Below are positions 1-60,081 of a stretch of 64,000 bases of DNA, in pieces. Source of the DNA: Octopus sinensis (Eukaryota); NCBI RefSeq assembly GCF_006345805.1, contig NC_043015.1:12338001-12402000 (forward strand). Direction: 5' to 3'. The position numbers and the translations under genes were made by a program. How positions within the stretch are numbered: the first letter of the stretch is position 1; the number at the start of each line of letters is the position of its first letter. Under the pieces are notes generated by a model. The model was not told the origin of the DNA, did not search any database, and saw nothing but the letters and a program-made list of their open reading frames with translations.

Positions 1-113
1 AGTGGGTTTTCTGGTTTTGAAGGTGAGATTTGAGGGCAGTCGTTGCGAGGCGGCAGAAACTATTGCTTCAGTTATCAAACCCGGAACTAAATTCAAGACA
101 TTTCATTGCTGCA

Positions 114-965
114 ATGACTGACATGGATGCCGTACCCGAAAAAAGGAGAAAACGGAGTGACAGTACAGGCGACCATTTCGACGACCGACAAACCGAAGCA
201 GAACTATTGAAATGCTTCGATAAATATGATATGACACATAAAAAGCGAGGTGTCGCCTACATCTTCAACAATGAAACTTTCAGACACTCGGAACTTACTT
301 GTGGTGGATCATCAAAAGACGCACAAGATTTTAAAATGGCATTAATAAGACTTGGATTACAGGAAGAAGATATCCATATTAATACAGATTTAAGTACCGA
401 AGAGATGATTGGGGTTTTGCAAAGGTTTGGCAAAGATAATACTGATATTGATTCTGATTGTTTTATTTGTGCAATACTAAGTTATAGTAACTCAGAAGGT
501 CTAATCTATGGATACGACGATAAAACTGAACTAGAGAAATTACTTTCTTATCTGAGACCCGATCGTTGTCCATGTTTAAAAGGAATACCTAAATTATTCT
601 TTATTCAAGCATGCCGAGGAAGTAAGATGGATTGTGGGGTCGAACAAAATGATGTTGCTTCCTATGGATTTGAAAAAACGTCATCCAAAATTCCAATTAT
701 GGCAGATATGCTGGTTGCTTATTCATCGTGTGATAAATATCCTTCTTTCGGAAATGAAGAAGGAGGCTCGTGGTTTATGCAAACTCTAAGTAAAATGTTG
801 ACGTATTATGGCACTGAACATGAAATCATGACACTTTTAACCGCTGTCTCTAAGTACGTTGCCTCTTTAGGCTCCCGGATTCCGGACAATTCAGCATACA
901 ATGAATATAAACAAATGCCTCACATTACGTCGACATTGACTAAACAACTGAAGTTTGAACCGTAG
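114..965 (+). CDS. Caspase-3/7-like protein, copy 1 (283 aa from first ATG), predicted catalytically inactive; intronless
   Basis: Caspase-fold motifs: KRGVAYIFNNETF, FICAILS, PKLFFIQACRG, ADMLVAYS, GSWFMQ, QMP..STLTKQL. Catalytic His codon is TAT (Tyr, 483-485). The S1 Arg positions read Cys (300-302) and Gly (750-752). The ORF-track start at 30 is a TTG; the first ATG is at 114. Confidence 0.9.
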   Translation: MTDMDAVPEKRRKRSDSTGDHFDDRQTEAELLKCFDKYDMTHKKRGVAYIFNNETFRHSELTCGGSSKDAQDFKMALIRLGLQEEDIHINTDLSTEEMIGVLQRFGKDNTDIDSDCFICAILSYSNSEGLIYGYDDKTELEKLLSYLRPDRCPCLKGIPKLFFIQACRGSKMDCGVEQNDVASYGFEKTSSKIPIMADMLVAYSSCDKYPSFGNEEGGSWFMQTLSKMLTYYGTEHEIMTLLTAVSKYVASLGSRIPDNSAYNEYKQMPHITSTLTKQLKFEP

Positions 966-1563
966 AACATTTGTAATATGGGATCCTTAAATACAGTGAG
1001 AATTTCTGATGCACGCACACATTATACGAATATATATATATATATATATATGTATAAGGATGAAAAGGAACACATATGATTACAGACTTAATTTGATTTT
1101 ATAAATATCATCTAACTTTTAAGACGTTTAACTAAAACTATTTTCTACCGTAAATTTCAATAAGGACACAAGTGCCTTATATTTTCATGCTAAATCTCAA
1201 AATAATTCTTCACTCTGAAAATTCAACTAACATTGTTTGGCGAACCTGGTGCACAGTCACCCCTAACCCCGGAACCAACCTTTCCGATTTTTTTTCCGCA
1301 CCGGATTCCTATGTTTTCGATGACGGAGATTCCAAATATGAAAAAAAAAAAAAGAACACGTTTTTAAAATTTTTTAATTTTTAACTCATTTTCGAATTTT
1401 TCTTTTCAATCTACGTGGAAAAATACGGAGATTATATATTTATGTGTTTGTGTATGTTTGTATGTCTGTGTTTGTTCCCCCACCCTTGCTTAACAACCGA
1501 CTCGCCTCCATTCAAAAATTGGGTTACCGACCCACTAAAAAATTGAGGTTGGATTAAAAGTGC

Positions 1564-1960
1564 TACTCTCTCTCTTTTACTTGTTTCAGTCATTTGACTG
1601 CGGCCATGCTGGAGCACCGCCTTTAGTCGAGCAAATCGACCCCGGGACTTATTCTTTGTAAGCCCAGTACTTATTCTATCGGTCTCTTTTTGCCGAACCG
1701 CTAATGACGGGGACGTAAACACATCAGCATCGGTTGTCAAGCAATGCTAGGGGAACAAACACAGACACACGCACATACATACATATATATATATATACAT
1801 ATATACGACAGGCTTCTTTCAGTTTCCGTCTACCAAATCCACACACAAGGCATTGGTCGGCCCGGGGCTATAGTAGAAGACACTTGTCCAAGATGCCACG
1901 CAGTGGGACTGAACCCAGGACCATGTGGTTGGTTAGCAAGCTACTTACCACACAGCCACT
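1564..1960 (-). mobile_element. tRNA-derived SINE, family A
   Basis: Near-complete copy of the window's most frequent ~390 bp repeat. Minus strand has A-box (TGGCTGTGTGG)- and B-box (GGTTCAGTCCC)-like motifs, an internal microsatellite and an AAGAGTA-type tail. Confidence 0.8.
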
Positions 1961-3046
1961 CGGCGTTTGGCCTCCTCAATAGGCATGTTATAAAAAAATG
2001 TTATTAGATTCAATAAAATGAATAATGTTTTCAGTTTTCATGTTTATTAATTTTTTCAGGCTTATCAATTTTTCCTTATTTTTTTGTTTTATTGAGGGTT
2101 AAACAATTTCTTTAGGTGGGGGAGATAACTGAAGGTACCAATATTTTTCATTAAACGGGGTGGGGGAGATAACCCAATTTTTTAAATGGGGATGAGATAA
2201 CCAAAAAGTACCCAACCGATGTTAGTGTGTTTACGTCCTCGTAACTTTGGTCGGCCAGAGGCTGTAGTAGAAGAAACTTGCCCAATGTACCATGTATTTG
2301 TTGACTTACACATTATTATATCTTACAATTAAGGCGGCGAACTGGCAGAATTGTTAGCACGTTGGACAAAATGTATAGCGGTATTTCGTCCGTCGCTACG
2401 TTCTGAGTTCAAATTCCGCCGAGGTTGACTTTATTTTTCATTCTTTCGGGATCGGTGCAGCCCCCTCCACACGAATTTTAGGCCATGTGCCTCCAGTAGA
2501 AAGGATTATTTTAAGTTTACAGCGGGGCTTAAATTTGAAACTGTGATAGCTTAGTAACGAGAAATGGGTCACAGCCTATCAGGCAACTTACTTGAACTCG
2601 GCTGCAATTATGTGATCGAAAGAATTTTCGACGAATTTCTGGCCACAACAGGGCTACAAACTGAGATGCGCGCCAAAATCAGGAGACAGACAGAGGGAAC
2701 AGGGGTCCATGAAAAGACAGGTTTTAGTGGTCGCAGCCGAGCCTGAGTTAAAAGGAATCGTTTGTCGACAATGAACTCAGAATCTTCTCTGCTCTCACGA
2801 CACGAAGATATATGCAGTCATATCTCTAATCCCTCGGCAAAAACCCATATATATCTATATGTACACAAAAGGTTTCATCTAACATTAAATGGGCTTTGTT
2901 GTAATATAGGTAACAGCCAAATCAGCCCACCTATTTAACCAAAGTTTTTTAACTAAAGTATTTTTCTTTTGGTTAAATACTTATAAATTAACTAAATGTT
3001 TTTGCTCCCTGATAGTAATATACGTTGCGTTTAAAATCTTCTATAT

Positions 3047-4530
3047 GCTTGTCCCACCCGTAACAAACGAGGTAGACAACCTACCATTACCTCAGCATAC
3101 AAAAGGACCCACTGTGAACGCTGGCAGGGCTGGACGAAGCCAGACTACCTACCTTCAGATGCACACGACATCAGAACTACAATCGCACATGCTATCGGTG
3201 TCAGCCTTAGAACAACGCTTAAAACCCATATTTTAAAGTTGAACAACAAACTGTATAAACAGACGAAAGGCGGTGCTATTGGAGTAGGGATCGCCGGTGA
3301 TGTTGCTAACCTCTTCATGGTATGGTGGGACAGACAGTTTGAACACTGCCTAACGACCCGTAACATCCACTTAGCTATGTACTCTCGATACGTTGACGAC
3401 ATTAACCTTGTCGTGAAACGTAATAGTAATACAGACACAGATATAGACTCTACTAAATGAAGAACAGGTGATGACAGCTATACAACACATAGCTGACTCT
3501 ATCCATAGCAGTATAAAAGTTACCGTAGACTACCCCTCTAAACACCCCAGTAATAGATTACCTGTCCTAGATACTGAGCTGTGGATAGAAAATACTATGG
3601 TTAACGGAACTGTTAAACCCTGTATGCTCCACTCACACTATTGTAAACCTATGGCTAATCCACTGGTAATCCGTAGTGACTCGGCGATGTCGAATACTAC
3701 CAAGCTCAACATCCCAGTGGCAGACTTAGAGTAATGAGGAGTGTATCCCCACTATGCCAACTACAAGAACGACAACACATCCAGCACTACATATTCCGAA
3801 TGCAACGCTCCGGATACACACAATACGATAGAATCAGAGTGTACAAAGGAGCGAAAACAAAATTCGAACGCATTCTAAGAAATGACGAAAACGGTATATG
3901 CCCTCTATACCGCAACAAGTTCTGGAATAGGTTAGAGAGGGACACCAACAAAAGGAATAAAATTAATACTTGGTATGATAACAAGAAATTTCACAGTGTA
4001 ATGTTTGTTGATTCCACACCTAAGAACGAATTAAGTAAGGCATTTAAGAAAATCCTGCGCACAACTGGCGTTAAGATCAAAGTTGGAGAAAAGACAGGTA
4101 GGACTATCAAATCTGTATTATGTAGATCATATCCATTTGATAGAATCACGTGGCGAAATAATTGTGCAGTATGTTCTACAAAACCACATGTGAACTGCAA
4201 AATCAAGAGCACTGTATACCTTATTAAGTGCCAAGAAGGTGCTTGCGCGACTAACCCAGAGTCATACATAGGTGAGACTTCTAGAAGTATCAATGACAGG
4301 TTCAAAGAACATCTGGACAACTACATTGAAAAGAAACCAAACTCCATCTTCTATCAGCATGCTGTAGACTGCCACAAGGGCTCCTTAGGGAGACTTAAGT
4401 TAAACATCTTATCCACACATCCCACTGATGCAATGCTGAGACAGGTCACTGAAGCTGTCTGTATACAAGAATACAAACCCACTCTCAACCGAAAATCCGA
4501 ATGGAGTAACATCCAGATTCCACTCGGGAG
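3047..4530 (+). mobile_element. Penelope-like retroelement (RT + GIY-YIG), 5'-truncated, frameshifted
   Basis: Successive ORF pieces give YKQTKGGAIG, SRYVDDI, LPVLD, then VYLIKC...C...YIGETSRSINDRFKEH (GIY-YIG) and PTLNRKSEW. RT plus GIY-YIG is diagnostic of PLEs. Confidence 0.88.
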
Positions 4531-5138
4531 TAGCATTCTATCAACCCCTCTCTCTCATTTACATGTGGTAATCCATACATACATGTTGAAATGCATGATA
4601 CTAAAATACATATATGCAATTATATATAACCGTATGAGCGTACATTATTTGATAAGTATGTACGTATGTGTAGATGTATATGTGGTGTGTATGTTAGTGT
4701 ATAAGTATGTACATGCATGCACATATGAGTATGTGTAGATATATGTATGTATTGTATATGTATGCATGTAAAAAAAAAGAATAAATAGAATAAAATAAAG
4801 CAAATTTGAATTTTAATCGTTGTCCCTGAAAAGAGTTATATATATATATATATATATATCAACAATTGAGGGTAAAATTAATTAATTAATCAATTTCACC
4901 AAGTGTTCAGTATGTAAAAGGACCATTTAAGGCGAATTCAAAATATTACATTATATAATTAGGGCTTAGTAAAATAAATTACTTTGCCACATACTGAACT
5001 TAGTAGAAATAGCAGCTAAAAAAAATTTTCTTAGCATTTCTACTACTTAAAGAAAATTTCTCTCAGATAATGTTTACTCCAGACAGCTCACGAAGGTGTG
5101 GGGGTAAATACAGAAAAATATCACAAGTACATAGATCG

Positions 5139-5201
5139 TTTGAGTACGTCAACGTTTCAAGATTAGCCAAATAAAATCAGCATTTCTTTCGTCAGCTCAA
5201 A
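5139..5201 (-). ncRNA. Type I hammerhead ribozyme motif (mirror copy in the other palindrome arm)
   Basis: Exact reverse complement of 5218-5280. Confidence 0.8.
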
Positions 5202-5217
5202 ATTTCTTAATTTGGAT

Positions 5218-5280
5218 TTTGAGCTGACGAAAGAAATGCTGATTTTATTTGGCTAATCTTGAAACGTTGACGTACTCAAA
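5218..5280 (+). ncRNA. Type I hammerhead ribozyme motif
   Basis: Stem I TTTGAG/CTCAAA, core CTGACGA (5224-5230), stem II AAGA..TCTT, GAAA (5261-5264), stem III ACG-ttga-CGT, cleavage triplet GUA (site after 5274). Confidence 0.8.
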
Positions 5281-5461
5281 CGATCTATGTACTTGTGATA
5301 TTTTTCTGTATTTACCCCCAAACCTTCGTGAGCTGTCTGGAGTAAACATTATCTGAGAGAAATTTTCTTTAAGTAGTAGAAATGCTAAGAAAATTTTTTT
5401 TGGTTGCTATTTCTACTAAGTTCAGTATGTGGCAAAGTAATTTATTTTACTAAGCCCTAAT

Positions 5462-5492
<31 letters not shown>

Positions 5493-5643
5493 ACATTATT
5501 GTTCAATTATCCGCACCAACGCACGGTTGCAACGCCAGATGGTTGTACCTCCAACCGTGCTGTTCACTGCTGTGATTTTGCTACTAAGGTATCGGTTAAA
5601 CTTTTGATTAATCTACTACAAGATTATTCATCTTCTATTTCAC

Positions 5644-5747
<104 letters not shown>

Positions 5748-5931
5748 TGTATGTAGAGATGGATAAGCGTATGTGTGCATACTTTAAAATTATACGTATA
5801 TTTGTATGTGTAAGTGTCTATATGATTGTGTGTACTTGTATATATGTATAAGGTTATATATGCATATATGTATCTAAGACGTTGTATCCATTCACCGTTA
5901 CACGGTGATGAGAGTGACAAACGCACGCACA

Positions 5932-5969
<38 letters not shown>

Positions 5970-6267
5970 TGTGTGTGTGTCTATATACACGTATATGTGT
6001 GTATATATACAGCCTTCAACAAAGTAACAGTCATGTATACAACTTGAACTGACACATATCAGTACATAAACATACGTTCACATGTACACACACACAGGCA
6101 CGTCTACACATTCTCCTATATACTCACATACATACGTAAGTACATGCATACATGCGTATAGGCAGGCGCACACACACATGCATACATACATACATACATA
6201 CATACATACATACATACATACATACATACATACATACATACATACATACATACATACATACATACAT

Positions 6268-6818
6268 GGTGGCTGCCCCCTCGTTATCGAGTATGGCCAT
6301 TGCGCGAAGCTTAATCAATGTTGTTATCGTGCAATGCCTGTGCAAGAAGATTTTTTTTTAAAGTGAGGAAAGGCTGTGCACTGAGTCAATCCCACTCACT
6401 AAGCAACAGCAGCTATAATCCGAAAAGAAGAACAAGTCAACATCATCGTTAACCACTGAGCCGCAGGTTTTATTTCGGAGTTATCCCAGTTACCTGAGTT
6501 ACCTTCTCCTAGAAGGATGCCCTAACAAAGGCTAGGAGTCTTTCACTCCCAATGGTTTAACCGCGCGATCGGGTATTCAGTCCGATTATTTCTATGTCCC
6601 CGCACATGATACAGCCTTAAGACATTTATTGGATGGCCATTGACTCTCAAGAGTTCCTCCGCCCTTTGACGGGTTTTGTTTTTCATCCCGCAGGGTGTCC
6701 AATAAACACCCTCCTCACCAAGCAAGCTTGGTGGGGTTGCCGGTTTAGTCGCCGACGACACGACCATGCAACAGGTTGAATTGGGTTACATGTTACCAGT
6801 AGCACTCGAAAGTGACTT
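6268..6818 (-). mobile_element. Non-coding interspersed repeat resembling an RTE-LINE UTR derivative, embedded in (CATA)n/(CATGA)n
   Basis: GC-richer 550-bp block bounded by tetra/pentanucleotide microsatellites; no coding motif seen. The family assignment is from general resemblance only. Confidence 0.35.
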
Positions 6819-6881
6819 GACATGACATGACATGACATGACATGACATGACATGACATGCATGCATACATACATACATACA

Positions 6882-7002
<121 letters not shown>

Positions 7003-7891
7003 TGAACTAACGGATACTTTCTCAGATGCAGCACGGAATTCTGTCAGTGAACAGGTCGCGGTGAACAGCGACAAAAATATTTTGACAAATTAAATTTAAA
7101 TGTTGAAGTGAATCGAACGGTTTTTGTCTGTTTCTTAAATGGCTTATAAACACCTTCCACGCTGCAATTGTTTTCGTTCCAGCACACGATCTCAGATCAG
7201 GTCACTTGCTATGTAAGTACATCTCCGTAATATTATTTTGTTCTCCTGTCGTAAACTCGTGTTTCGTTTTGGTTTTGGCATCACAAATAAAACATATATT
7301 TATACATTACTCGTTTAGGTGCAGGTGTTGCAGTGAGGTAAGAAGCTGCATGGTCCCTTGAGCAAGTGCCGTCTACCATAGCTTTGGGCCGACCAAAGTC
7401 TTGAGAGTAGATCTGGTAGACGGAAACTGAAAGAAACACATTGTATATGTGTGTGTGTGTCCTCGGATTAGATAAATCTTTCTATTATGCATTAAATTTA
7501 TATATATAAATATGTGTGTGTGTGTGTGTGTGTGTGTATCTTTGTGTCTGTCCTCTACCACCGCGTGGCAACCAGTGTTGGTGTGTTTACGTCCCCGTAA
7601 CGTAGCGGTTTGGCAAAACAACACGATAGAATAAGTATCAGGGTTTTAAAAATTAGTTTGGGGGTCGATTCGTTCGACTTAAGTTCTCTCAAAGGCAGTA
7701 GAAACAAGTAGATTTCTTCGATATTATGTTGTAATTTACCACAATACGATCTAAATTAACGAAGGAAAGTTTTCGGATCTTCTTTTCTCTCTTTTACTAT
7801 TTTTTGGAATGTGTGATGGAAAAAGGGGGAGGGAATTTTTTCTGAAATTCTAAAGTCACTCTATAGTTTTGATTCGTTTTTCATAAACCTT

Positions 7892-8486
7892 TACTCTTTT
7901 ACTTGTTTTAGTCATTTGGCTGCGGCTATGCTGGAGCACCGCCTTTAGTCGAGCAAATCGACCCCGGGACTTATTCTTTTGTAAGCCCAGTACTTATTCT
8001 ATCAGTCTCATTTGCCGAACCGCTAAGTAACGGGGACATAAACACACCAGCATCGGTAGTCAAGCAATGCTAGGGGGACAAACACAGACACACACACGCA
8101 TATATATATATACATATATACGACGGGCTTCTTTCAGTTTCCGTCTACCAAATCCACTCACAAGGCATTGGTCAGCCCGGGGCCATAGCAGAAGACACTT
8201 GCCCAAGATGCCACGCAGTGGGAATGAACCCGGAACCATGTGGTTGGTAAACAAGCTACTTACCTATTTCTTTATTACCCACAAGGGGCTAAACATAGAG
8301 GGGACAAACAAGGACAGACATAGGTATTAAGTCGATTACATCGACTCCAGTGCGTAACTGGTACTTAATTCATCGACCCCGAAAGGATGAAAGGCAAAGT
8401 CGACCTCGGCTTTGCCTTTCATCCTTTCGGGGTCGATGAATTAAGTACCAGTTACGCACTGGGGTCGATGTAGCCACTCCTGCGCC
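7892..8486 (-). mobile_element. SINE family A with a nested, folded-back SINE family B (8264-8471) in its head
   Basis: The family A head CTACTTACC|acac|AGCCACTCCTGCGCC is split at 8263/8472 by family B sequence. Confidence 0.8.
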
Positions 8487-8998
8487 TTTAATTATATTTT
8501 ATATATTATTAGTAGTAGTATTAAAATTAACTCCTATGTCCCGTTTCTCAGAAAAATCTGATGCACATACGATTTAGCGTTACAAGGGAGGTCACTCTTC
8601 ATACACTTCAGTGCTGGAGAGATCCGCATATTGCTCTCTTAATTTTTCGATGAATACGGCGAGCTTAGCGAGATTGTTAAGTACACCGGACAAAACTGCT
8701 TAGCAGCATTATCATATGTCTTCATGTTCTGATTTTAAATTCTAGGGAAGTCGGCTTTGACTGTCATCCATACGGGGTCGATAAAATAAGTACCAGTTGA
8801 TTACTGAATCAATGTAATCAACTGGTCCTACACACACACATACCATAAAATTTCAGTCTTTGTGCTTATAAGAGAAAAAAAACAAACTATTAATTTTTCG
8901 AAGGGGTCAATGGATTGACAGAATCGTTCGAACGTAGGACAATATGCCTCGCAGTATTTCTTCGACTCACTGGAGTTTATATGAAATACTTGTCATGA

Positions 8999-9105
8999 AC
9001 TGCGTGGCACCTTGGGCAAGTGTCTTCTACTATAGCCTCGGGCCGACCAAAGCCTTGTGAGTAGATTTGGTAGACGGAAACTGAAAGAAGCCCGTCGTAT
9101 ATATG

Positions 9106-9170
<65 letters not shown>

Positions 9171-9385
9171 ATGTTTGTGTGTCTGTGTTTGTCTCCCTAG
9201 CATTGCTTGACAACCGATGCTTGTGTGTTTACGTCCCCGTCACTTAGCGGTTCGGCAAAAGAGACCGATAGAATAAGTACTGGGCTTACAAAGAATAAGT
9301 CCCGGGGTCTATTTGCTCGACTAAAGGCGGTGCTCCAGCATGGCCGCAGTCAAATGACTGAAACAAGTAAAAGAGTAAAAGAGTA
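8999..9385 (+). mobile_element. SINE family A, 5'-truncated
   Basis: Matches family A from ACTGCGTGGCACC to the AAAAGAGTA tail. Confidence 0.8.
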
Positions 9386-9981
9386 ACGTAAACGGTATAG
9401 AGTAAAACTTCTCAAAATTGCTGCTTTTTCGCCTAAATTAGAAAAAAAATTATCAATTTTTCCGAAATATATAACAGGCGTGGTTTGATTCTTTAAAGCA
9501 TTTGTTCATGTCATCTTTCTCAACATCCACCTTTCTTTAAAGGCGTTGAATTGTTAAGGGGAATTTGGCTGCTTTTCCTAAAAGGTCGAGGGTCCACGAA
9601 GGCTATGTGACTATTATAGGTGGGAGTAAAACGAAAGAAAAAGGAAGCGGGTGGGGGAGGCAAAATGCAGAATTCTTAGATGTCAAATGCGAAGTGAACC
9701 TGTTGGATATGGTGCAAAACTGTATGAAGGTCAGCCTTTGTTCATCTGTTTCAAGAAAATTCAGTGTCTGTTTTATTGTTACTTGTTTCAATCTTTTGAC
9801 TGCGGCCATGCTGGAGCAACACCTCGAAGGGGGGGGGAGGTTAGTCGAAGAAATCGATCCCAGGACTTATTTTTTGTAAGCTTAGTACATACTCTATCGG
9901 GGTCTCTTGCCGAACCGCTAAGTTACGGGGACATAAAGACACCACAATCGGTTGTCAAACAATGGTTGGCAAGCGGAGGAG

Positions 9982-10015
<34 letters not shown>

Positions 10016-10021
10016 GTCTTT

Positions 10022-10060
<39 letters not shown>

Positions 10061-11593: not shown

Positions 11594-11619
11594 TCTGTCT
11601 GTCTATATATATTATTCTT

Positions 11620-11787
11620 TTACTCTTTTACTTGTTTCAGTCATTTGACTGCGGCCATGCTGGAGCACCGCCTTTAGTCGAGCAACTCGACCCCGGGACT
11701 TATTCTTTGTAAGCCCAGTACTTATTCTATCGGTCTCTTTTTGCCGAACCGCTAAGTGACGGGGACGTAAACACACCAGCATCGGTT
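11620..11787 (-). mobile_element. SINE family A, 3' part
   Basis: Near-identical to the 3' half of other family A copies. Confidence 0.75.
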
Positions 11788-11789
11788 GC

Positions 11790-15457: not shown

Positions 15458-16297
15458 ATGACTACTATGGATGCTCGATATGTAAGTGAACCCATGAGAG
15501 CTGATCAGTTTCATCAGTCAACTGGGGAGGATTTAATGAAATGTTTTAATAAATACGATATGACGCATAAAAGGCGAGGTGTCGCTTACATCTTCAACAA
15601 TGAAAATTTCAAACGATCGGAACTTGCAACTCGTTATGGCTCATCAAAAGATACAGAAGATTTTAAAAAGGCATTAATTAAACTTGGATTCCGTGAAGAT
15701 GATATCAAAGTTTATATGGATGCAACAGTCGAAGAAATGCGCGACGCTTTGAAGCAGTTTGGAAAAAATTCTCATACTGATATTGATTGCTTTATTTGTG
15801 CAATATTGAGTCATGGTGGCCCGGACGACGTTATCTGTGGATACGACGATGTTGTTAAACTAGACGAATTGTTTTCTTACCTGAGACCCAAGTGTTGTCC
15901 ATCTTTAACAGGAGTACCTAAATTATTCTTTGTTGAAGCATCTCGTGGAAGTAAGATTGATGTGGGGGTCGAAAAAACTGATGCTGATTTAATAGGGTAT
16001 GGAAAAAGGACACCCAAAATTCCGGTTATGGCAGATATGTTGGTTGTTTATTCATCGAGTAATGAATATTCTTCTTTCATAAATGAAGATGGTTCGTGGT
16101 TTATGCAAGCTCTAAGTAAAATGTTGATGGAATATGGCAATGAATATGAAATCATGAAACTTTTAACTGCTGTCTCTAACCGTGTTGCCTCTTTAGACTT
16201 CCGAAGTTCGGCTAATTCGGAATACAATGGATGTAAACAAATGCCTCACATTATGTCGACATTGATTAAAGAACTAAAGTTTCAGTCCAAGAACTAA
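15458..16297 (+). CDS. Caspase-3/7-like protein, copy 2 (279 aa), predicted catalytically inactive; intronless
   Basis: Same motifs as the other copies. SHG intact (His 15812-15814) but QACRG reads EASRG (Ser codon 15941-15943). The small-subunit S1 Arg is Ile (16079-16081). Confidence 0.92.
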   Translation: MTTMDARYVSEPMRADQFHQSTGEDLMKCFNKYDMTHKRRGVAYIFNNENFKRSELATRYGSSKDTEDFKKALIKLGFREDDIKVYMDATVEEMRDALKQFGKNSHTDIDCFICAILSHGGPDDVICGYDDVVKLDELFSYLRPKCCPSLTGVPKLFFVEASRGSKIDVGVEKTDADLIGYGKRTPKIPVMADMLVVYSSSNEYSSFINEDGSWFMQALSKMLMEYGNEYEIMKLLTAVSNRVASLDFRSSANSEYNGCKQMPHIMSTLIKELKFQSKN

Positions 16298-36731: not shown

Positions 36732-37559
36732 ATGGCTGCTCAACGTGCAAGTGTAACAGGTGGTCAGAGTCATCACCCAAGTAAGGCAGATTTAAAGAAA
36801 TGGTTCGATAGATATGATATGACGCATAAAAAGCGAGGTGTCGCTTACATCTTCAACAACGAAACTTTCAAACACCCGAAACTTAAAACTCGTTATGGCT
36901 CATCAAAAGATACAGAAGATTTTAAAAAAGCATTAATTAAACTTGGATTCCGTGAAGATGATATCAAAGTTTATACGGATGCAACAGTCGAAGAAATGCG
37001 CGACGCTTGGAAGCAGTTTGGAAAAAATTCTCATACTGATATTGATTGCTTTATTTGTGCAATATTGAGTCATGGTGACTCGGACGACATTATCTGTGGA
37101 TACGACGGTACTGTCAAACTAGACGAATTGTTTTCTTACCTGAGACCTGATCGTTGCCCATCTTTAAAAGGAATACCTAAATTATTCTTTATTCAAGCAT
37201 GTCGTGGAACTGCATCTGATTCTGGAGTCGAAAAAACTGATGCTGATTACATAGACCATGAAGAAATGTCACTCACAATTCCAGTTATGGCAGATATGTT
37301 GGTTGTTTATTCATCATGTAATAAACATGCCTCTTACAGAGATGAAAAGGCTGGCACGTGGTTTATGCAAGCCTTAAGTGAAATGTTGATGGAATATGGC
37401 ACCAAATATGAAATCATGAAACTTTTAACTGCTGTCTCTAACCGTGTTGCCTCTTTAGACCTCCAAAGTTCGGCTAATTCGGAATGCAAAAGTTGTAAAC
37501 AAATGCCTCAGATTAATTCGACATTGATTAAAGAACTAATGTTTGAACCAAAAAAATAA
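36732..37559 (+). CDS. Caspase-3/7-like protease, copy 3 (275 aa), catalytic residues intact; intronless
   Basis: TRYGS (S1 Arg), SHG (His 37071-37073), QACRG (Cys 37200-37202), linker VEKTD/ADYID and SYRD..GTWF (second S1 Arg) are all present. Confidence 0.93.
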   Translation: MAAQRASVTGGQSHHPSKADLKKWFDRYDMTHKKRGVAYIFNNETFKHPKLKTRYGSSKDTEDFKKALIKLGFREDDIKVYTDATVEEMRDAWKQFGKNSHTDIDCFICAILSHGDSDDIICGYDGTVKLDELFSYLRPDRCPSLKGIPKLFFIQACRGTASDSGVEKTDADYIDHEEMSLTIPVMADMLVVYSSCNKHASYRDEKAGTWFMQALSEMLMEYGTKYEIMKLLTAVSNRVASLDLQSSANSECKSCKQMPQINSTLIKELMFEPKK

Positions 37560-42899: not shown

Positions 42900-43968
42900 T
42901 CTAGGACAGCACTCTTCACTCTTTCAAATGACATCTGGTGTACCACAGGGATCTGTTCTTGGCCCCCTTTTATTTGTAGCATATATTAATGACATAGATG
43001 CCAACTTAAAGAATGCCACAGTGCTGAAATATGCAGATGACATCAAGCTGTACCTCAAAATAAAGAGGACAGATCCTGTACACTATAGATCTTTATTGCA
43101 ATCAGACCTGGACGCAATGCAGCAATGGATCATGGACTGGCAACTCAAGCAGGATGTGGACAAATGTACCACCATGCATTTTGGGAGGAAAAACCCAGCG
43201 TCTACTTACTCCCTCCACAACACTAATCTCAAAAGGTCTTCTTGTGAACGTGACCTGGGTGTTATTGTCGACAGTGATTTGCGTTGGACAAAACACATTG
43301 CTAAAATTGCCAAGAAGGCTGAGGGTGCCTTGGAATCACTTACCAAGTCCTTTGTGAGCCGCTCTCCGGCTATCTATCTGAAGCTTTATATAGCTATGGT
43401 GCGGCCTCGCCTGGAGTTTGCATCACCGGTCTGAGACCCCTATCTTACCCAGGATATTAATCGTCTGGAAATCGTTCAACGACGTGCAACCAAGAGAATA
43501 CCCTCTATCAGGCATTTGCCATATTCTGAACGCCTTACTTCCCTGGGCATGGATACACTGAAACTCCGACGTCTGGCAGACACCCATAAAATTATTAACC
43601 ATCTTACAAACAATAACTCTGAGCACCTTTTCAAATTCGACCTGTCTAACACCCGTGGACATGTTTATAAAGCCAGAAAACAGCACAGTTCCCATGTCTT
43701 TCGGAAACATTTTTTCACGCTAAAAGTTGCTGAATTATGGAACAAACTGTCGGCATCAGTTGTTAGTTGTCGGAGCACTGCATCCTTCAAAACTTCCATG
43801 CTTCCTGAGATTCGCCAACACTACACCTGATTTTCTCCCCTCCATACACACGCAAGCTTGTATCTGATTCATACACTGTTCACTCCCCAGACATTTGTAC
43901 ATTGCTGCATATGCTTTATACGCACTTTCGACAAGTTGTGGTGCACCCGAGCACTGTATACAATAATT

Positions 43969-52414: not shown

Positions 52415-52696
52415 CTTTTTTCTATTCCTGAGCGCTATACTAATACATTTGTTTGTTTGTACACCACCTGCCTTCGTCATTTGTTTATTTTCGTAAACTT
52501 TCCCTTTATATATATATATATATATATAATCAATAATAATAAAGGGTAAAATCAATGAATTAATTAATAATTAATAATTTCACCGAGTAGTTTGGTATGT
52601 TAAAAGAACTATTATCGGTAAACTTATACAAAAATTCTATAATTATGAGTATAATTATAATTAAGGTTCAGCAACGAGTTCGATTCCAAGCAGTGA

Positions 52697-53798
<1,102 letters not shown>

Positions 53799-54342
53799 AG
53801 TACCAGGGTGTGGCTCTCATGGCTTCTGATCTTAACTGATTGGAAGTGTTATCATGTACATTGTTTTGTCTTGGTATAAAAGATGGGCTACAACAAATAT
53901 TCTGCTCAATACCACAGATTTGCTTGTCAGTTGTTTGACCTTAACCAGTTGAGCATGTCCCTTAGTGGCTGACCATATGTGCATCTCTGATCACGAGCAG
54001 AAGTTGTAGGGGGGCATCATAGCCATGTGTTGAGAGGGATTCTTTGGGGTTTGAATAGTTCACCTCTGGAAACATGGGTGGTTCTTTCAACATCCTTAAA
54101 CAACTCTTATTCAGGGACCGTTTCAGCGGGATGGGCTACTCAACCTGAAGAAAATTCTAACTGGGCCCCACCTGCAAGGTCATGTGCTGTTTATCTTGAT
54201 ATGAGATCACCATGTCGCGCACATATGGTTGTGATGCATGTGCCTGGTGTACCCTTATCGGACGGGTAGTCATGATGGGTATATTGGGCTTCGTATATTT
54301 TACCCCAGTGTCACTTTGATGGCATGAACTGCTCTCTCACTC
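53799..54342 (-). mobile_element. Second copy of the (TTA)n-embedded ~550-bp repeat
   Basis: Reverse complement of 44037-44580. Confidence 0.75.
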
Positions 54343-54440
<98 letters not shown>

Positions 54441-54528
54441 TAATAATGATAATGATAATGATAATAATAAAATAATAATGATAATGATAATAATATATAA
54501 TAATATAATAATAATAATAATAATAATA

Positions 54529-54567
<39 letters not shown>

Positions 54568-54569
54568 TA

Positions 54570-54630
<61 letters not shown>

Positions 54631-54631
<1 letters not shown>

Positions 54632-54815
54632 GACGACGACGGCGGCGGCGGCGAAAGCGACGGCGGCAGCGGCGAAAGCGACGGCGGCGGAGGCGACGGC
54701 GACGGCGAAAGCGACGGCGAAAGCGGCGGCGACGGCGACGGCGAAAGCGGCGGCGACGGCGACGGCGAAAGCGGCGGCGACGGCGACGGCGAAAGCGGCG
54801 GCGACGACGACAACG
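54631..54815. repeat. GC-rich trinucleotide array with a 24-bp higher-order unit (GCGGCGGCGACGGCGACGGCGAAA)
   Basis: About three exact units plus variants. Confidence 0.85.
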
Positions 54816-54945
54816 ATGACATCGAAAAATACCTTGGGAATGAGAACTCCTGAAGAAGGCTGGAGGGTATATCAGCCGAAATGTGTTAACAACAAACATG
54901 ATAAGGGCAAATATCCGTCGAATGTAAATAATGTAAATAACGTAC

Positions 54946-55003
<58 letters not shown>

Positions 55004-55378
55004 CATATTTATTTCTTTATTCATTCATTCATTTATTTATTTCATCATTTGATGTAGCAAAGCTGGAGCACCGTTTTGAAAGATTTTACTCGAACTAATC
55101 AACTCCAGATTCATTTTTTAAGCCTAGTACAAAATTAAAGCAATTATATGTCTTATCGAGAGAGGGAGGAAGCGGCATGTGTGAGAGATATACATATACA
55201 GGGTGAGAGTGATTAACTGTGTGGTAAATATATAAAGAAAGAAGAAAAGCTTCAAAAACAGTGAGACCCCGTAGAGACATATAGAGAATGGTAGAGTTGT
55301 CGATCTAAAATTTCTTTCTCGTAGCAAATTTTTTTTTTTTCAATTATATAATATATAATATATAATATATAATATATT

Positions 55379-59196: not shown

Positions 59197-59981
59197 ATGA
59201 CTACTACAGATGCTCGGTGTGTGAGTCTAACTGGCGATAAGAATCGTCGACCAATTGAGGAAGATTTAATGAATTGTTTCCATAAATATGAAATGACACA
59301 TAAAAAGCGAGGTGTTGCCTACATCTTCAACAATGAAACTTTCGAAGACTCGTCACTAAAAACTCGTCTTGGCTCATCAAAAGACTCAGACGATTTTAAA
59401 AATGCATTAATTAAACTTGGATTCGAAGAAGATGATATCCACCTTTATACAGACGCAACAACCGAGGAAATGCTCGAGGCTTTGGAGCTTTTTGGTAAAG
59501 AAAATTCTGATATTGATATTGATTGCTTTATTTGTGCAATTTTAAGTCATGGTGGGCAAGACGATATTATCTATGGATACGAAGGTCCTATAGAGCTAGA
59601 AAAATTGCTTTCTTGCCTGAGACCCGATCGTTGTGCACCTCTCACAGGAATACCTAAATTATTCTTTATTCAAGCATGTCGTGGAACTACACCGGATATT
59701 GGAGTCGAAAAAAAAGATGCTGATTACATAGACCATGATGAAAGGTCACCTAAAATTCCAGTTATGGCAGATATGTTGGTTGTTTATTCATCTGTTAATA
59801 AATATCCTTCTTTCAGAGATGAAGGAGAAGGTTCGTGGTTTATGCAAGTTTTAAGTAAAATTTTGACAGAATATGGCACTCAGTGTGAAATCATGAAACT
59901 TTTAACTGCTGTCCTAACGTGGTTGCCTCTTGAGACTTCCGAAGTTCGGTTAATCGGAATACAATGGATGTAAACAATGCC
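59197..59981 (+). CDS. Caspase-3/7-like protease, copy 4, catalytic residues intact; 3' end indel-ridden and cut by assembly gap
   Basis: TRLGS, SHG (59548-59550), QACRG (59677-59679) and SFRD..GSWF present. The last ~70 nt before the N gap match the copy 2 3' end except for several 1-nt indels. The ORF-track start at 59158 is a GTG. Confidence 0.85.
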
Positions 59982-60081
59982 NNNNNNNNNNNNNNNNNNN
60001 NNNNNNNNNNNNNNNNNNNNNNNNNNNNNNNNNNNNNNNNNNNNNNNNNNNNNNNNNNNNNNNNNNNNNNNNNNNNNNNNN
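59982..60081. other. Assembly gap (100 N)
   Basis: Run of exactly 100 Ns, typical of a placeholder for a gap of unknown size. Confidence 0.99.

What the first reader, a model, noticed from the sequence alone, without database searches (positions are those of the whole stretch)
291..752. Copy 1: catalytic His and both Asp-binding arginines lost, Cys retained
Seen: SHG->SYS (CAT->TAT at 483-485, GGT->AGT); large-subunit S1 Arg -> Cys (300-302) with a one-codon deletion (ELTCGGS vs ELATRYGS); small-subunit S1 Arg -> Gly (750-752); QACRG is intact. Three active-site hits in an otherwise well-conserved fold look more targeted than random decay (inference). A QACRG-based annotation would wrongly call this an active caspase.
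Basis: partly seen in the sequence, partly recalled or inferred. Interest (0 to 1): 0.72.

Follow-up and report, generated by a model that had tools for sequence, protein, structure and literature searches.

The report
Octopus caspase copy without catalytic residues
One of four neighbouring octopus caspase genes has lost the histidine and both arginines it needs to cut after aspartate; three Octopus species share this loss, so it is most likely a non-cutting "pseudo-caspase" that databases still label as a normal caspase.

Summary
The window is Octopus sinensis chromosome DNA with four tandem single-exon effector-type caspase genes. Copy 1 (114-965, +) has TGT (Cys) at the caspase-3 R64 position, TAT-AGT (Tyr-Ser) for His121-Gly122 and GGA (Gly) at R207. 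QACRG is intact. These positions are 111-112/112 conserved in ordinary effector caspases.

This is not an assembly error. The syntenic orthologues in O. vulgaris and O. bimaculoides also lack R64 (Cys), H121 (Cys) and R207 (Glu, Gly), so the loss predates their split.

At the 55 most conserved caspase columns, the only changes specific to copy 1 are these four (P=5e-4). The predicted fold is a confident caspase-3/7 fold. The reading frame is open in all three species, and orthologue differences avoid family-conserved columns (15% vs 39%, p=6e-5).

"Targeted" is not required, however. Mean dN/dS in the copy-1 clade is 0.96, not distinguishable from 1. The dead sites keep changing between sister species. 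The O. bimaculoides copy has a broken N-terminus, and gene conversion occurs in the array.

Best reading: a retained catalytically dead effector caspase, possibly regulating active paralogues. A gene slowly decaying is the main rival. It is a new member of a known kind (pseudo-caspases), of moderate interest.

The parts
114..965 (+). Copy 1: a single-exon CDS of 283 codons plus stop. It is an effector-type caspase homologue, present in NCBI as an O. sinensis protein with a 236-aa isoform X2 named 'caspase-3-like'.
   Evidence: ORF. Pfam PF00656 E=8e-48. Exact protein in the collection, cluster with XP_036367180.1. AF2 pLDDT 86.7 and Foldseek TM about 0.9 to caspase-3/7 and Sf-caspase-1.
114..230 (+). 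Short N-terminal peptide (M1-D39) before the first beta strand. It has no CARD or DED. It contains the basic run EKRRKRS and a 6-codon stretch absent from copies 2-4.
   Evidence: Alignments. Low pLDDT (56-72) for residues 1-30. In O. bimaculoides this segment has ATG>TTG and a 1-nt deletion.
297..302 (+). ACT TGT: Cys at the caspase-3 R64 (S1 pocket) position, from CGT>TGT, a CpG transition. A one-codon deletion lies just upstream (between 296 and 297) and is specific to O. sinensis.
   Evidence: Cys is shared by all three species.
480..488 (+). AGT TAT AGT (S-Y-S) in place of S-H-G. The catalytic His121 and the oxyanion-hole Gly122 are lost.
   Evidence: O. vulgaris has TGT AGT (C-S) and O. 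bimaculoides has TGT GGT (C-G).
606..620 (+). QACRG pentapeptide retained, with the catalytic Cys163 equivalent at 612-614.
   Evidence: Identical in all three orthologues.
651..653 (+). GAT: the conserved Asp of the presumed inter-subunit processing site (VEQND|V, aligned with caspase-3 IETD175|S).
   Evidence: Invariant in all 9 array sequences. That it acts as a cleavage site is inferred from the alignment.
750..752 (+). GGA: Gly at the caspase-3 R207 (S1 pocket, small subunit) position.
   Evidence: O. vulgaris has GAA (Glu) and O. bimaculoides has GGA (Gly).
909..956 (+). KQMPHITSTLTKQLKF: the equivalent of the beta-6 strand and C-terminal segment that forms the dimer interface in caspase-3/7. 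It is conserved in the three orthologues.
   Evidence: Alignments. Its role in dimerisation is inferred from caspase-3/7 structures.
15458..16297 (+). Copy 2: a paralogue with the complementary loss (QACRG>EASRG, R207>Ile; His and R64 kept).
36732..37559 (+). Copy 3: a paralogue with all catalytic and S1 residues canonical. It is the likely active partner and the comparator used here.
59197..59973 (+). Copy 4: canonical active site, but the frame is broken after ...LLTAV (59913), next to the 100-N gap at 59982-60081.

Best explanation
Copy 1 is a catalytically dead effector-type caspase paralogue, a stand-alone pseudo-caspase. It sits in a four-gene tandem array that belongs to a caspase clade found here only in Octopus.

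Shown: it keeps the caspase fold, the QACRG loop, the linker Asp and the dimer-strand sequence. It lacks the general-base His, the oxyanion-hole Gly and both Arg residues that hold the P1 aspartate. This state is older than the O. sinensis / O. bimaculoides split.

From established caspase enzymology: without His121, R64 and R207 it cannot work as an Asp-directed cysteine protease.

Inferred: the protein is still made and is kept for a non-catalytic role. The most plausible role is pairing through the conserved beta-6 interface with active neighbours such as copy 3, or competing with them for upstream activators or inhibitors. That would tune executioner caspase activity much as FLIP(L) tunes caspase-8.

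Selection on it is weak. The core is conserved, the surface and the former active-site cleft change fast.
For: Loss of R64, H121, G122 and R207 at columns that are 111-112/112 conserved. Syntenic orthologues in O. vulgaris have 97% aa identity and collinear flanks. In O. bimaculoides the array order is the same. Both carry the same losses. The c1 clade has 100% bootstrap support.

The only lineage-specific changes at 55 ultra-conserved columns are the four active-site ones (P=5e-4). AF2 gives pLDDT 86.7 and pTM 0.83, and the top Foldseek hits are Sf-caspase-1, caspase-7 and caspase-3 with TM about 0.9.

No premature stop occurs in the 244-codon core in any species, with P=5e-4 to 3e-2 under neutrality. 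Orthologue amino-acid differences are depleted at columns invariant in the other paralogues (15% vs 39%, p=6e-5), and most are conservative. The linker Asp is invariant in all nine sequences. There is an annotated RefSeq model with a splice isoform. Precedents for regulatory pseudo-caspases are FLIP(L) (PMC7586951) and coral caspase-X (PMC4715348).
Against: Mean dN/dS of the copy-1 crown is 0.96, not different from 1 (p=0.86) and not significantly different from the family background of 0.62 (p=0.085). dN/dS at family-invariant columns is 0.71, against 0.19-0.39 in the paralogues. The O. bimaculoides orthologue has ATG>TTG and a 1-nt deletion that gives a stop 10 codons after the second ATG, so only an internal Met start remains. 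Gene-conversion tracts between copies 1 and 2 in O. bimaculoides could help keep a dead ORF open and distort rate estimates. There is no direct expression or protein evidence: the accessions were not found in the held skin-mucus proteome supplements. Heterodimerisation and any regulatory effect are pure inference.
Confidence: 0.55

Rival explanations
1. Copy 1 is a duplicate on its way out. It lost catalysis, has no remaining function and is drifting. The open frame has survived by chance and through occasional gene conversion from its neighbours.
For: Crown dN/dS is 0.96. dN at family-invariant columns is raised. The N-terminus is broken in O. bimaculoides. Conversion tracts occur in the array. 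The lost positions continue to change. The family readily produces degenerate copies: copy 2, P0011/P0015, P0012, P0036, and the disrupted copy 4.
Against: The 244-codon core has no stop in three species (P=5e-4 to 3e-2). Within the core, the indels are whole codons. Replacements strongly avoid family-conserved columns (p=6e-5). There are no lineage-specific hits at 41 non-catalytic ultra-conserved columns. The orthologues are most similar (93-97% nt), and unlike the paralogues, across the stretch just after the lost His up to QACRG (alignment codons 132-169), so conversion is not what maintains that part.
Confidence: 0.3
2. Copy 1 is a re-tooled protease. The retained Cys still acts as a nucleophile with a different partner residue, and the S1 pocket, stripped of its arginines, accepts a non-Asp P1 residue.
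For: QACRG is fully retained in all three species. That is unlikely if the motif were entirely unconstrained (P about 0.02 at the variable-column rate, higher at lower rates). Other clade members keep His and Cys but alter S1 residues (P0036, P0012, P0018), so specificity change may occur in this family.
Against: No residue that could replace the general base is conserved: position 121 is Tyr, Cys, Cys. Position 122 is Ser, Ser, Gly. Position 207 is Gly, Glu, Gly. Even O. sinensis and O. vulgaris (1.2% nt divergence) differ at 121 and 207. A working new active site should be conserved. QACRG also has a structural role, and the ASRG part is kept in the Cys-less copies too.
Confidence: 0.08
3. 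The substitutions are sequencing or assembly errors in this assembly.
For: Copy 4 in the same window is broken next to an N gap, so local assembly quality is not perfect. The TAT (versus TGT) codon and the one-codon deletion are seen only in this assembly.
Against: Two other species' independent assemblies lack the same three residues. The four changes are separate point substitutions in a clean open frame.
Confidence: 0.02

Closest known systems
c-FLIP(L) / CFLAR, the mammalian pseudo-caspase
   Same: It has a caspase-like domain without a working catalytic centre, arose by duplication next to active paralogues, and regulates an active caspase by heterodimerisation (PMC7586951). That is the model for the mechanism proposed here.
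   Different: FLIP(L) is initiator-type, with two DEDs, and lacks both the His and the Cys. Copy 1 is executioner-type with only a short N-peptide, keeps QACRG and has additionally lost both S1 arginines. Partner binding is untested here.
Coral caspase-X (Acropora), N-terminal inactive caspase domain
   Same: An invertebrate, lineage-restricted caspase-fold unit lacking catalytic residues and proposed to modulate an active caspase domain (PMC4715348).
   Different: In caspase-X the dead and live domains are fused in one polypeptide, and the dead one lacks both His and Cys. Here the dead and live units are separate neighbouring genes.
Executioner caspases: human caspase-3/-7 and Spodoptera Sf-caspase-1
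   Same: These are the best sequence and fold matches (34-38% identity, TM about 0.9). They share the short prodomain, the p20-linker-p10 layout, the QACRG motif and the linker Asp.
   Different: Copy 1 lacks H121, G122, R64 and R207, which are invariant in 111-112 of 112 such enzymes.
C. elegans CSP-3/CSP-2 and inactive caspase-12 variants (from memory; caspase-12 is mentioned in PMC12292325)
   Same: Caspase homologues without proteolytic activity that restrain an active caspase or have lost function in some species.
   Different: As I recall it, CSP-3 consists of a small-subunit-like part only. Caspase-12 is an inflammatory, CARD-bearing caspase. Neither is a full-length executioner-type copy with Cys kept and His and Arg lost.

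Membership tests
Caspase family (MEROPS C14A / Pfam Peptidase_C14), by homology | Significant match to the caspase domain profile over its full length | tested here: met
   PF00656 E=8.3e-48, profile positions 1-232 of 233. phmmer to PDB caspases at 1e-46 to 1e-37.
Caspase family (MEROPS C14A / Pfam Peptidase_C14), by homology | Caspase alpha/beta fold | tested here: met
   AF2 pLDDT 86.7, pTM 0.83. Foldseek E about 1e-27 and TM to target 0.86-0.92 for caspase-3, -7, -6 and Sf-caspase-1.
Active Asp-specific caspase | Catalytic dyad His121-Cys163 (caspase-3 numbering) | tested here: not met
   Cys is present (612-614). His is replaced by Tyr (483-485), or by Cys in the two orthologues.
Active Asp-specific caspase | S1 pocket residues Arg64, Gln161 and Arg207 that bind the P1 Asp | tested here: not met
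   R64>Cys and R207>Gly. Only Gln161 is kept.
Active Asp-specific caspase | Oxyanion-hole Gly122 | tested here: not met
   Gly>Ser in O. sinensis and O. vulgaris. Gly is kept in O. bimaculoides.
Active Asp-specific caspase | QACXG pentapeptide | tested here: met
   QACRG at 606-620.
Active Asp-specific caspase | Measurable peptidase activity | not testable with these tools
   Needs recombinant protein and substrates or probes.
Executioner (caspase-3/7-type) subfamily | Short prodomain without CARD or DED, and closest relatives are caspase-3/7-type | tested here: met
   Only PF00656 was found. About 38 residues precede beta-1. The best PDB and database hits are caspase-3/7 and Sf-caspase-1.
Pseudo-caspase (pseudoenzyme of the caspase fold) | Caspase fold retained while residues essential for catalysis are missing | tested here: met
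Pseudo-caspase (pseudoenzyme of the caspase fold) | Maintained by selection as a protein (not a decaying pseudogene) | tested here: inconclusive
   For: open core ORF in three species (P<=0.03) and replacements avoiding conserved columns (p=6e-5). Against: dN/dS 0.96, broken N-terminus in O. bimaculoides and gene conversion.
Pseudo-caspase (pseudoenzyme of the caspase fold) | Binds and regulates an active caspase partner (FLIP-like mode) | not testable with these tools
   Only the sequence conservation of the beta-6 interface segment could be seen.
c-FLIP family proper | Tandem death-effector domains N-terminal to the pseudo-caspase domain | tested here: not met
   No DED or any second Pfam domain. 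It works perhaps like FLIP but is not a member.

The most novel reading that the evidence does not exclude
The Octopus-restricted caspase clade may be a fast-evolving, immune-type array that repeatedly generates and keeps dead or re-specified members. At least five lineages have altered active sites. In this reading copy 1 is a non-cutting 'bait' whose former substrate cleft is under diversifying selection. Two of the 8 amino-acid differences between O. sinensis and O. vulgaris fall on the former His and S1 Arg positions, and the indel and N126D lie beside them. The bait could trap pathogen caspase inhibitors or host IAP-like regulators, or set the activation threshold of its active neighbours.
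Probability: 0.1. Interest if true: 0.7.

Novelty: new member of a known kind. Interest (0 to 1): 0.42.

Why it matters
Pseudo-caspases are rare and informative regulators of cell death; FLIP(L) is described as the only human one. An executioner-type, stand-alone dead caspase conserved across Octopus species, sitting beside a canonical copy and beside a second copy with the complementary loss (Cys gone, His kept), would give a natural system for studying how executioner caspase activity is tuned by inactive partners in a lophotrochozoan. It also shows concretely that counts of 'caspases' in cephalopod genomes and proteomes overstate the number of active enzymes. Copy 1, copy 2 and P0011/P0015 lack a dyad residue, and P0012, P0018 and P0036 have altered S1 pockets, yet the named ones among them carry names such as caspase-3-like, caspase-1-like or caspase-7. 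If the gene is merely decaying, the finding is ordinary.

Tried and rejected
1. Retrogene origin of the clade, inferred from the single-exon CDS. Rejected as a distinguishing feature, because the more canonical O. sinensis caspase-3-like gene P0053 also has a single-exon CDS.

2. IAP-binding-motif idea. Cleavage after TDMD would expose AVPE. This is not conserved: O. bimaculoides has DVPA in a frame-shifted segment. Dropped.

3. Protein-level evidence. The O. vulgaris skin-mucus proteome (PMC11431876) lists several caspase-3/7-like proteins, but neither A0AA36BMN2 nor A0A7E6FII8 was found in the held (partly truncated) supplements.

4. Deeper orthologues. A profile search with the three orthologues found no further copy-1-type sequence outside O. 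sinensis, O. vulgaris and O. bimaculoides. Argonauta appears only with a canonical caspase-7-like protein.

5. Rate tests. Neither pairwise NG86 nor my own branch-model ML implementation could reject dN/dS=1 for copy 1. The signal of constraint comes only from where the replacements fall and from the open frame.

6. A first Monte-Carlo run for ORF survival timed out. It was replaced by an analytic Poisson estimate.

7. Literature. Four full-text searches found no description of octopus pseudo-caspases. Wang et al. 2024 (PMC11543851) include octopus effector caspases in a tree without comment on active sites.

8. tRNA scan of the window: none found.

Full report
**What the window is.** The window is AT-rich eukaryotic DNA (35.8% GC, one 100-N gap) full of microsatellites and retroelement fragments. 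Proteins encoded in the window sit on a 53.9-Mb contig together with proteins named Octopus sinensis, so this is an O. sinensis chromosome.

A tblastn of the copy-1 ORF against the window finds four paralogues on the + strand:
- copy 1 at 114-965
- copy 2 at 15458-16297
- copy 3 at 36732-37559
- copy 4 at 59197-59973

Each is a single coding exon with a full-length Pfam Peptidase_C14 match, except that copy 4's match is truncated.

**Checking the observation.**
- TGT at 300-302
- AGT-TAT-AGT at 480-488
- CAA GCA TGC CGA GGA (QACRG) at 606-620
- GGA at 750-752
- one codon missing between 296 and 297 relative to the paralogues

Residue equivalence was tested in two ways. HMMER alignments to solved structures put the Cys opposite the S1 Arg of Sf-caspase-1, SYS opposite SHG, QACRG opposite QACRG, and F-G-N opposite W-R-N of caspase-3. 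A 137-sequence MAFFT alignment including human caspase-3 maps the changes to R64, H121, G122 and R207.

Among 112 ordinary effector-type caspases from across animals, these columns read R 112/112, H 112/112, G 112/112 and R 111/112. Q161 and C163, which copy 1 keeps, are also 112/112.

**Not an assembly artefact, and old.** The copy-1 protein is in NCBI and UniRef. Its cluster holds a 236-aa isoform named 'caspase-3-like isoform X2 [Octopus sinensis]' and the O. vulgaris protein 'caspase-1-like isoform X1'.

The O. vulgaris locus is collinear with window 1-10045 at about 97% nucleotide identity. In O. bimaculoides the same gene order is found on one chromosome: P0002 at 21.770 Mb, P0003 at 21.784 Mb, P0138/P0005, then P0004 at 21.822 Mb. 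A neighbour-joining tree groups the three copy-1 sequences with 100% bootstrap. It pairs copies 2, 3 and 4 with their O. bimaculoides orthologues at 95, 87 and 100%. The four-gene array therefore predates the split of these species.

All three copy-1 orthologues have lost the same positions:

| Caspase-3 position | O. sinensis | O. vulgaris | O. bimaculoides |
|---|---|---|---|
| R64 | Cys (TGT) | Cys (TGT) | Cys (TGT) |
| H121 | Tyr (TAT) | Cys (TGT) | Cys (TGT) |
| G122 | Ser | Ser | Gly |
| R207 | Gly (GGA) | Glu (GAA) | Gly (GGA) |
| QACRG | intact | intact | intact |

R64 changed by CGT>TGT, a CpG transition. The loss of catalytic and S1 residues is ancestral to the three species. The Tyr and the one-codon deletion are recent, O. 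sinensis-specific additions.

**Is the pattern 'targeted' or decay?** Several tests bear on this.

(a) Ultra-conserved columns. Of 55 columns at least 90% identical in the 112 canonical caspases, copy 1 deviates at nine. Five of these (H108, K154, G202, W206F, S249) are shared by the whole Octopus clade, including the canonical copy 3. The other four are exactly R64, H121, G122 and R207. So there are four lineage-specific hits, all within nine textbook active-site columns out of 50 available (hypergeometric P=5.5e-4). Copy 1 has fewer non-catalytic deviations (5) than copy 3 (8).

(b) Fold. AlphaFold2 with a 110-sequence alignment gives pLDDT 86.7 and pTM 0.83. Foldseek returns Sf-caspase-1, caspase-7, -3 and -6 with TM to target 0.86-0.92.

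(c) Open frame. About 5.6-5.8% of random substitutions in this AT-rich CDS create stops. At the observed O. sinensis-O. bimaculoides divergence (0.08-0.18 per site), the chance that the 244-codon core escapes all of them is 0.034 to 0.0005. The indels inside the core are whole codons.

(d) Where replacements fall. Between the O. sinensis and O. bimaculoides orthologues, 15% of columns invariant in the other three paralogue pairs differ, against 39% of variable columns (Fisher p=6e-5). The changes at invariant columns are mostly conservative (V/I, R/K, M/I, D/E, F/L). A freely drifting sequence should not show this.

These four results contradict plain neutral decay of the whole protein.

**Constraint is nevertheless weak.**
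- Pairwise dN/dS for copy 1 is 0.92. The values for copies 2, 3 and 4 are 0.58, 0.88 and 0.45.
- A codon branch model that I implemented gives a background omega of 0.62, a copy-1 stem of 0.61 and a copy-1 crown of 0.96. The crown is indistinguishable from 1 (p=0.86) and only marginally different from background (p=0.085).
- Split by column class, copy 1 has omega 0.71 at family-invariant columns, where the paralogues have 0.19-0.39, and 1.40 at variable ones.
- In O. bimaculoides the first ATG is TTG. A 1-nt deletion in an A-rich run puts a stop ten codons after the second ATG, so the annotated protein starts at the internal Met just before beta-1.
- A sliding-window comparison shows gene-conversion tracts. 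Copies 2 and 3 of O. sinensis are 96-99% identical over alignment codons 72-133. Copies 1 and 2 of O. bimaculoides are 89-95% identical over about 192-265. Conversion can both inflate orthologue divergence and help keep a frame open.
- Over alignment codons 132-169, the stretch from just after the lost His to QACRG, the copy-1 orthologues are 93-97% identical to each other and only 76-91% identical to the paralogues. Conversion is not what preserves that core, and it has not restored the lost residues in any species.

**'Targeting' is also unnecessary.** At the replacement frequency seen in variable columns (0.55, an upper bound), about five of nine released active-site positions would be expected to have changed. 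Four did. The clustering is what one expects when catalytic constraint is lost and fold constraint remains. Retention of all five QACRG residues is mildly unexpected under full release (P about 0.02 at that upper-bound rate). However, the ASRG part of the motif is also kept in the Cys-less paralogues, which suggests a structural reason.

**Why not a re-tooled protease.** A new catalytic arrangement should be conserved. Instead position 121 is Y/C/C, position 122 is S/S/G and position 207 is G/E/G. O. sinensis and O. vulgaris differ at only 8 residues plus one codon. Those differences include positions 121 and 207, an N/D two residues further on, and an indel abutting the R64 position. With 2.8% of codons differing overall, two hits among nine textbook positions has P of about 0.03. 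This is a post-hoc hint of unusually fast turnover in the former cleft. It is compatible with relaxed or diversifying selection, not with a fixed new active site.

**Mechanism.**
- Shown: the caspase fold is kept; His, the oxyanion Gly and both S1 Arg are lost; and the Cys loop, the linker Asp (VEQND|V aligned to IETD175|S, invariant in all nine array sequences) and the beta-6 segment KQMPHITSTLTKQLKF are retained.
- From established caspase enzymology: such a protein cannot hydrolyse after Asp.
- Inferred: it persists as a non-catalytic subunit or competitor. It may dimerise with active neighbours through beta-6, be cleaved at the linker by upstream caspases, or soak up regulators. This is analogous to FLIP(L) with caspase-8 (PMC7586951) and to the inactive domain of coral caspase-X (PMC4715348).

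I put about 0.9 on catalytic death, about 0.55 on a retained non-catalytic protein, and about 0.3 on the heterodimer-regulator mode specifically. The main rival is slow decay (about 0.3).

**Context and comparison.** The clade with at least 46% identity to copy 1 contains only O. sinensis, O. vulgaris and O. bimaculoides proteins plus two unannotated Logan contigs. The next hits, at about 40%, are ordinary caspase-3/7 from many phyla, including octopus's own and Argonauta's.

Within the clade, altered active sites arose several times:
- copy 1
- copy 2 (C163S, R207I/G, Q161E)
- P0011/P0015 (Q161E, C163S)
- P0012 (Q161E, R207I)
- P0018 (R207K)
- P0036 (R64L, Q161A, A162T, R207T, with His and Cys intact)

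The whole family evolves fast (omega about 0.6-0.7). Some family members may be among the caspases seen in octopus skin mucus (PMC11431876), but copy 1 itself was not found there. No paper in the searchable library describes octopus pseudo-caspases.

By homology copy 1 is a caspase-family member of executioner type. It fails the defining tests of an active caspase. It resembles FLIP in principle but is not a FLIP-family member, because it has no DEDs.

**Verdict.** The finding is a new member of a known kind, a stand-alone executioner-type pseudo-caspase that is at least as old as the O. sinensis / O. bimaculoides split. Interest is moderate.

Noticed in passing
window 15458-16297 (+): Copy 2 is a second degenerate caspase with the complementary loss. 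QACRG has become EASRG (catalytic Cys>Ser, Gln>Glu) and the R207-equivalent is Ile, while His and R64 are kept. The O. bimaculoides orthologue P0003 has QASRG and R207>Gly.
   Followed up: partly
window 59197-60081 (+): Copy 4 has a canonical active site, but after ...LLTAV (59913) the frame shifts twice and meets a stop, immediately before the 100-N gap at 59982-60081. It is either a pseudogene or an assembly problem. The O. bimaculoides orthologue P0004 is intact.
   Followed up: partly
window copies 2 and 3 (about 15670-15860 and 36930-37120); L002/L003 in O. bimaculoides: There are gene-conversion tracts. Copies 2 and 3 of O. sinensis are 96-99% identical at nucleotide level over alignment codons 72-133. 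Copies 1 and 2 of O. bimaculoides are 89-95% identical over codons about 192-265, which may have carried the R207>Gly codon into copy 2 there.
   Followed up: partly
related proteins P0036 (O. vulgaris), P0012 (O. sinensis), P0018 (Logan contig): Some clade members keep the His-Cys dyad but have altered S1 pockets: R64L/Q161A/R207T, Q161E/R207I, and R207K. They are candidates for caspases with non-Asp P1 preference.
   Followed up: no
window 114-965 versus L001 9992-10846: O. sinensis and O. vulgaris copy 1 differ at only 8 residues plus one codon. Two of the 8 are the former His (Y/C) and S1 Arg (G/E) positions, one lies two residues after the His position, and the indel abuts the R64 position. 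This is a hint of unusually fast change in the former cleft (post hoc, P about 0.03).
   Followed up: partly
L002 about 9885-9935 (O. bimaculoides copy-1 orthologue): The first ATG is TTG, and a 1-nt deletion in an A-rich run gives a stop ten codons after the second ATG. The annotated protein starts at the internal Met before beta-1. This could be real or a homopolymer error.
   Followed up: partly
window about 790 and about 8977: The RefSeq isoform X2 of copy 1 (236 aa) leaves the CDS after ...QTLSK (a GTAAAA donor near 790). It continues into sequence matching a repeat-rich region near 8977 (LYEILVMN). This is probably a minor or aberrant transcript, but it implies transcript evidence for the gene.
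   Followed up: partly
window 16279-16297 versus P0007: The NCBI 'isoform X2' protein of copy 2 (P0007) is identical to the window ORF except for its last residues (EPKK instead of QSKN). Those residues equal the C-terminus of copy 3. No obvious splice explains this.
   Followed up: no
window 42928-43434 (+); 3239-4738 (+): There is a reverse-transcriptase ORF (Pfam RVT_1, E=2e-14) at 42.9 kb. ORFs at 3.2-4.7 kb have YVDD-like and GIY-YIG-like strings but no Pfam hit; they may be a Penelope-like element.
   Followed up: partly
window about 52600-55050; also 1564-1961, 7890-8264, 8999-9383, 11612-11788: There is a large trinucleotide and low-complexity block that gives poly-Tyr/Leu/Ile/Asn 'ORFs'. 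A roughly 400-bp interspersed repeat is present several times in the window and in the O. vulgaris locus. ARAGORN finds no tRNA gene.
   Followed up: no
L006 2001-2867 (O. sinensis caspase-3-like P0053): The more canonical octopus caspase-3-like gene also has an intron-free CDS, so a single coding exon is not peculiar to this clade.
   Followed up: yes
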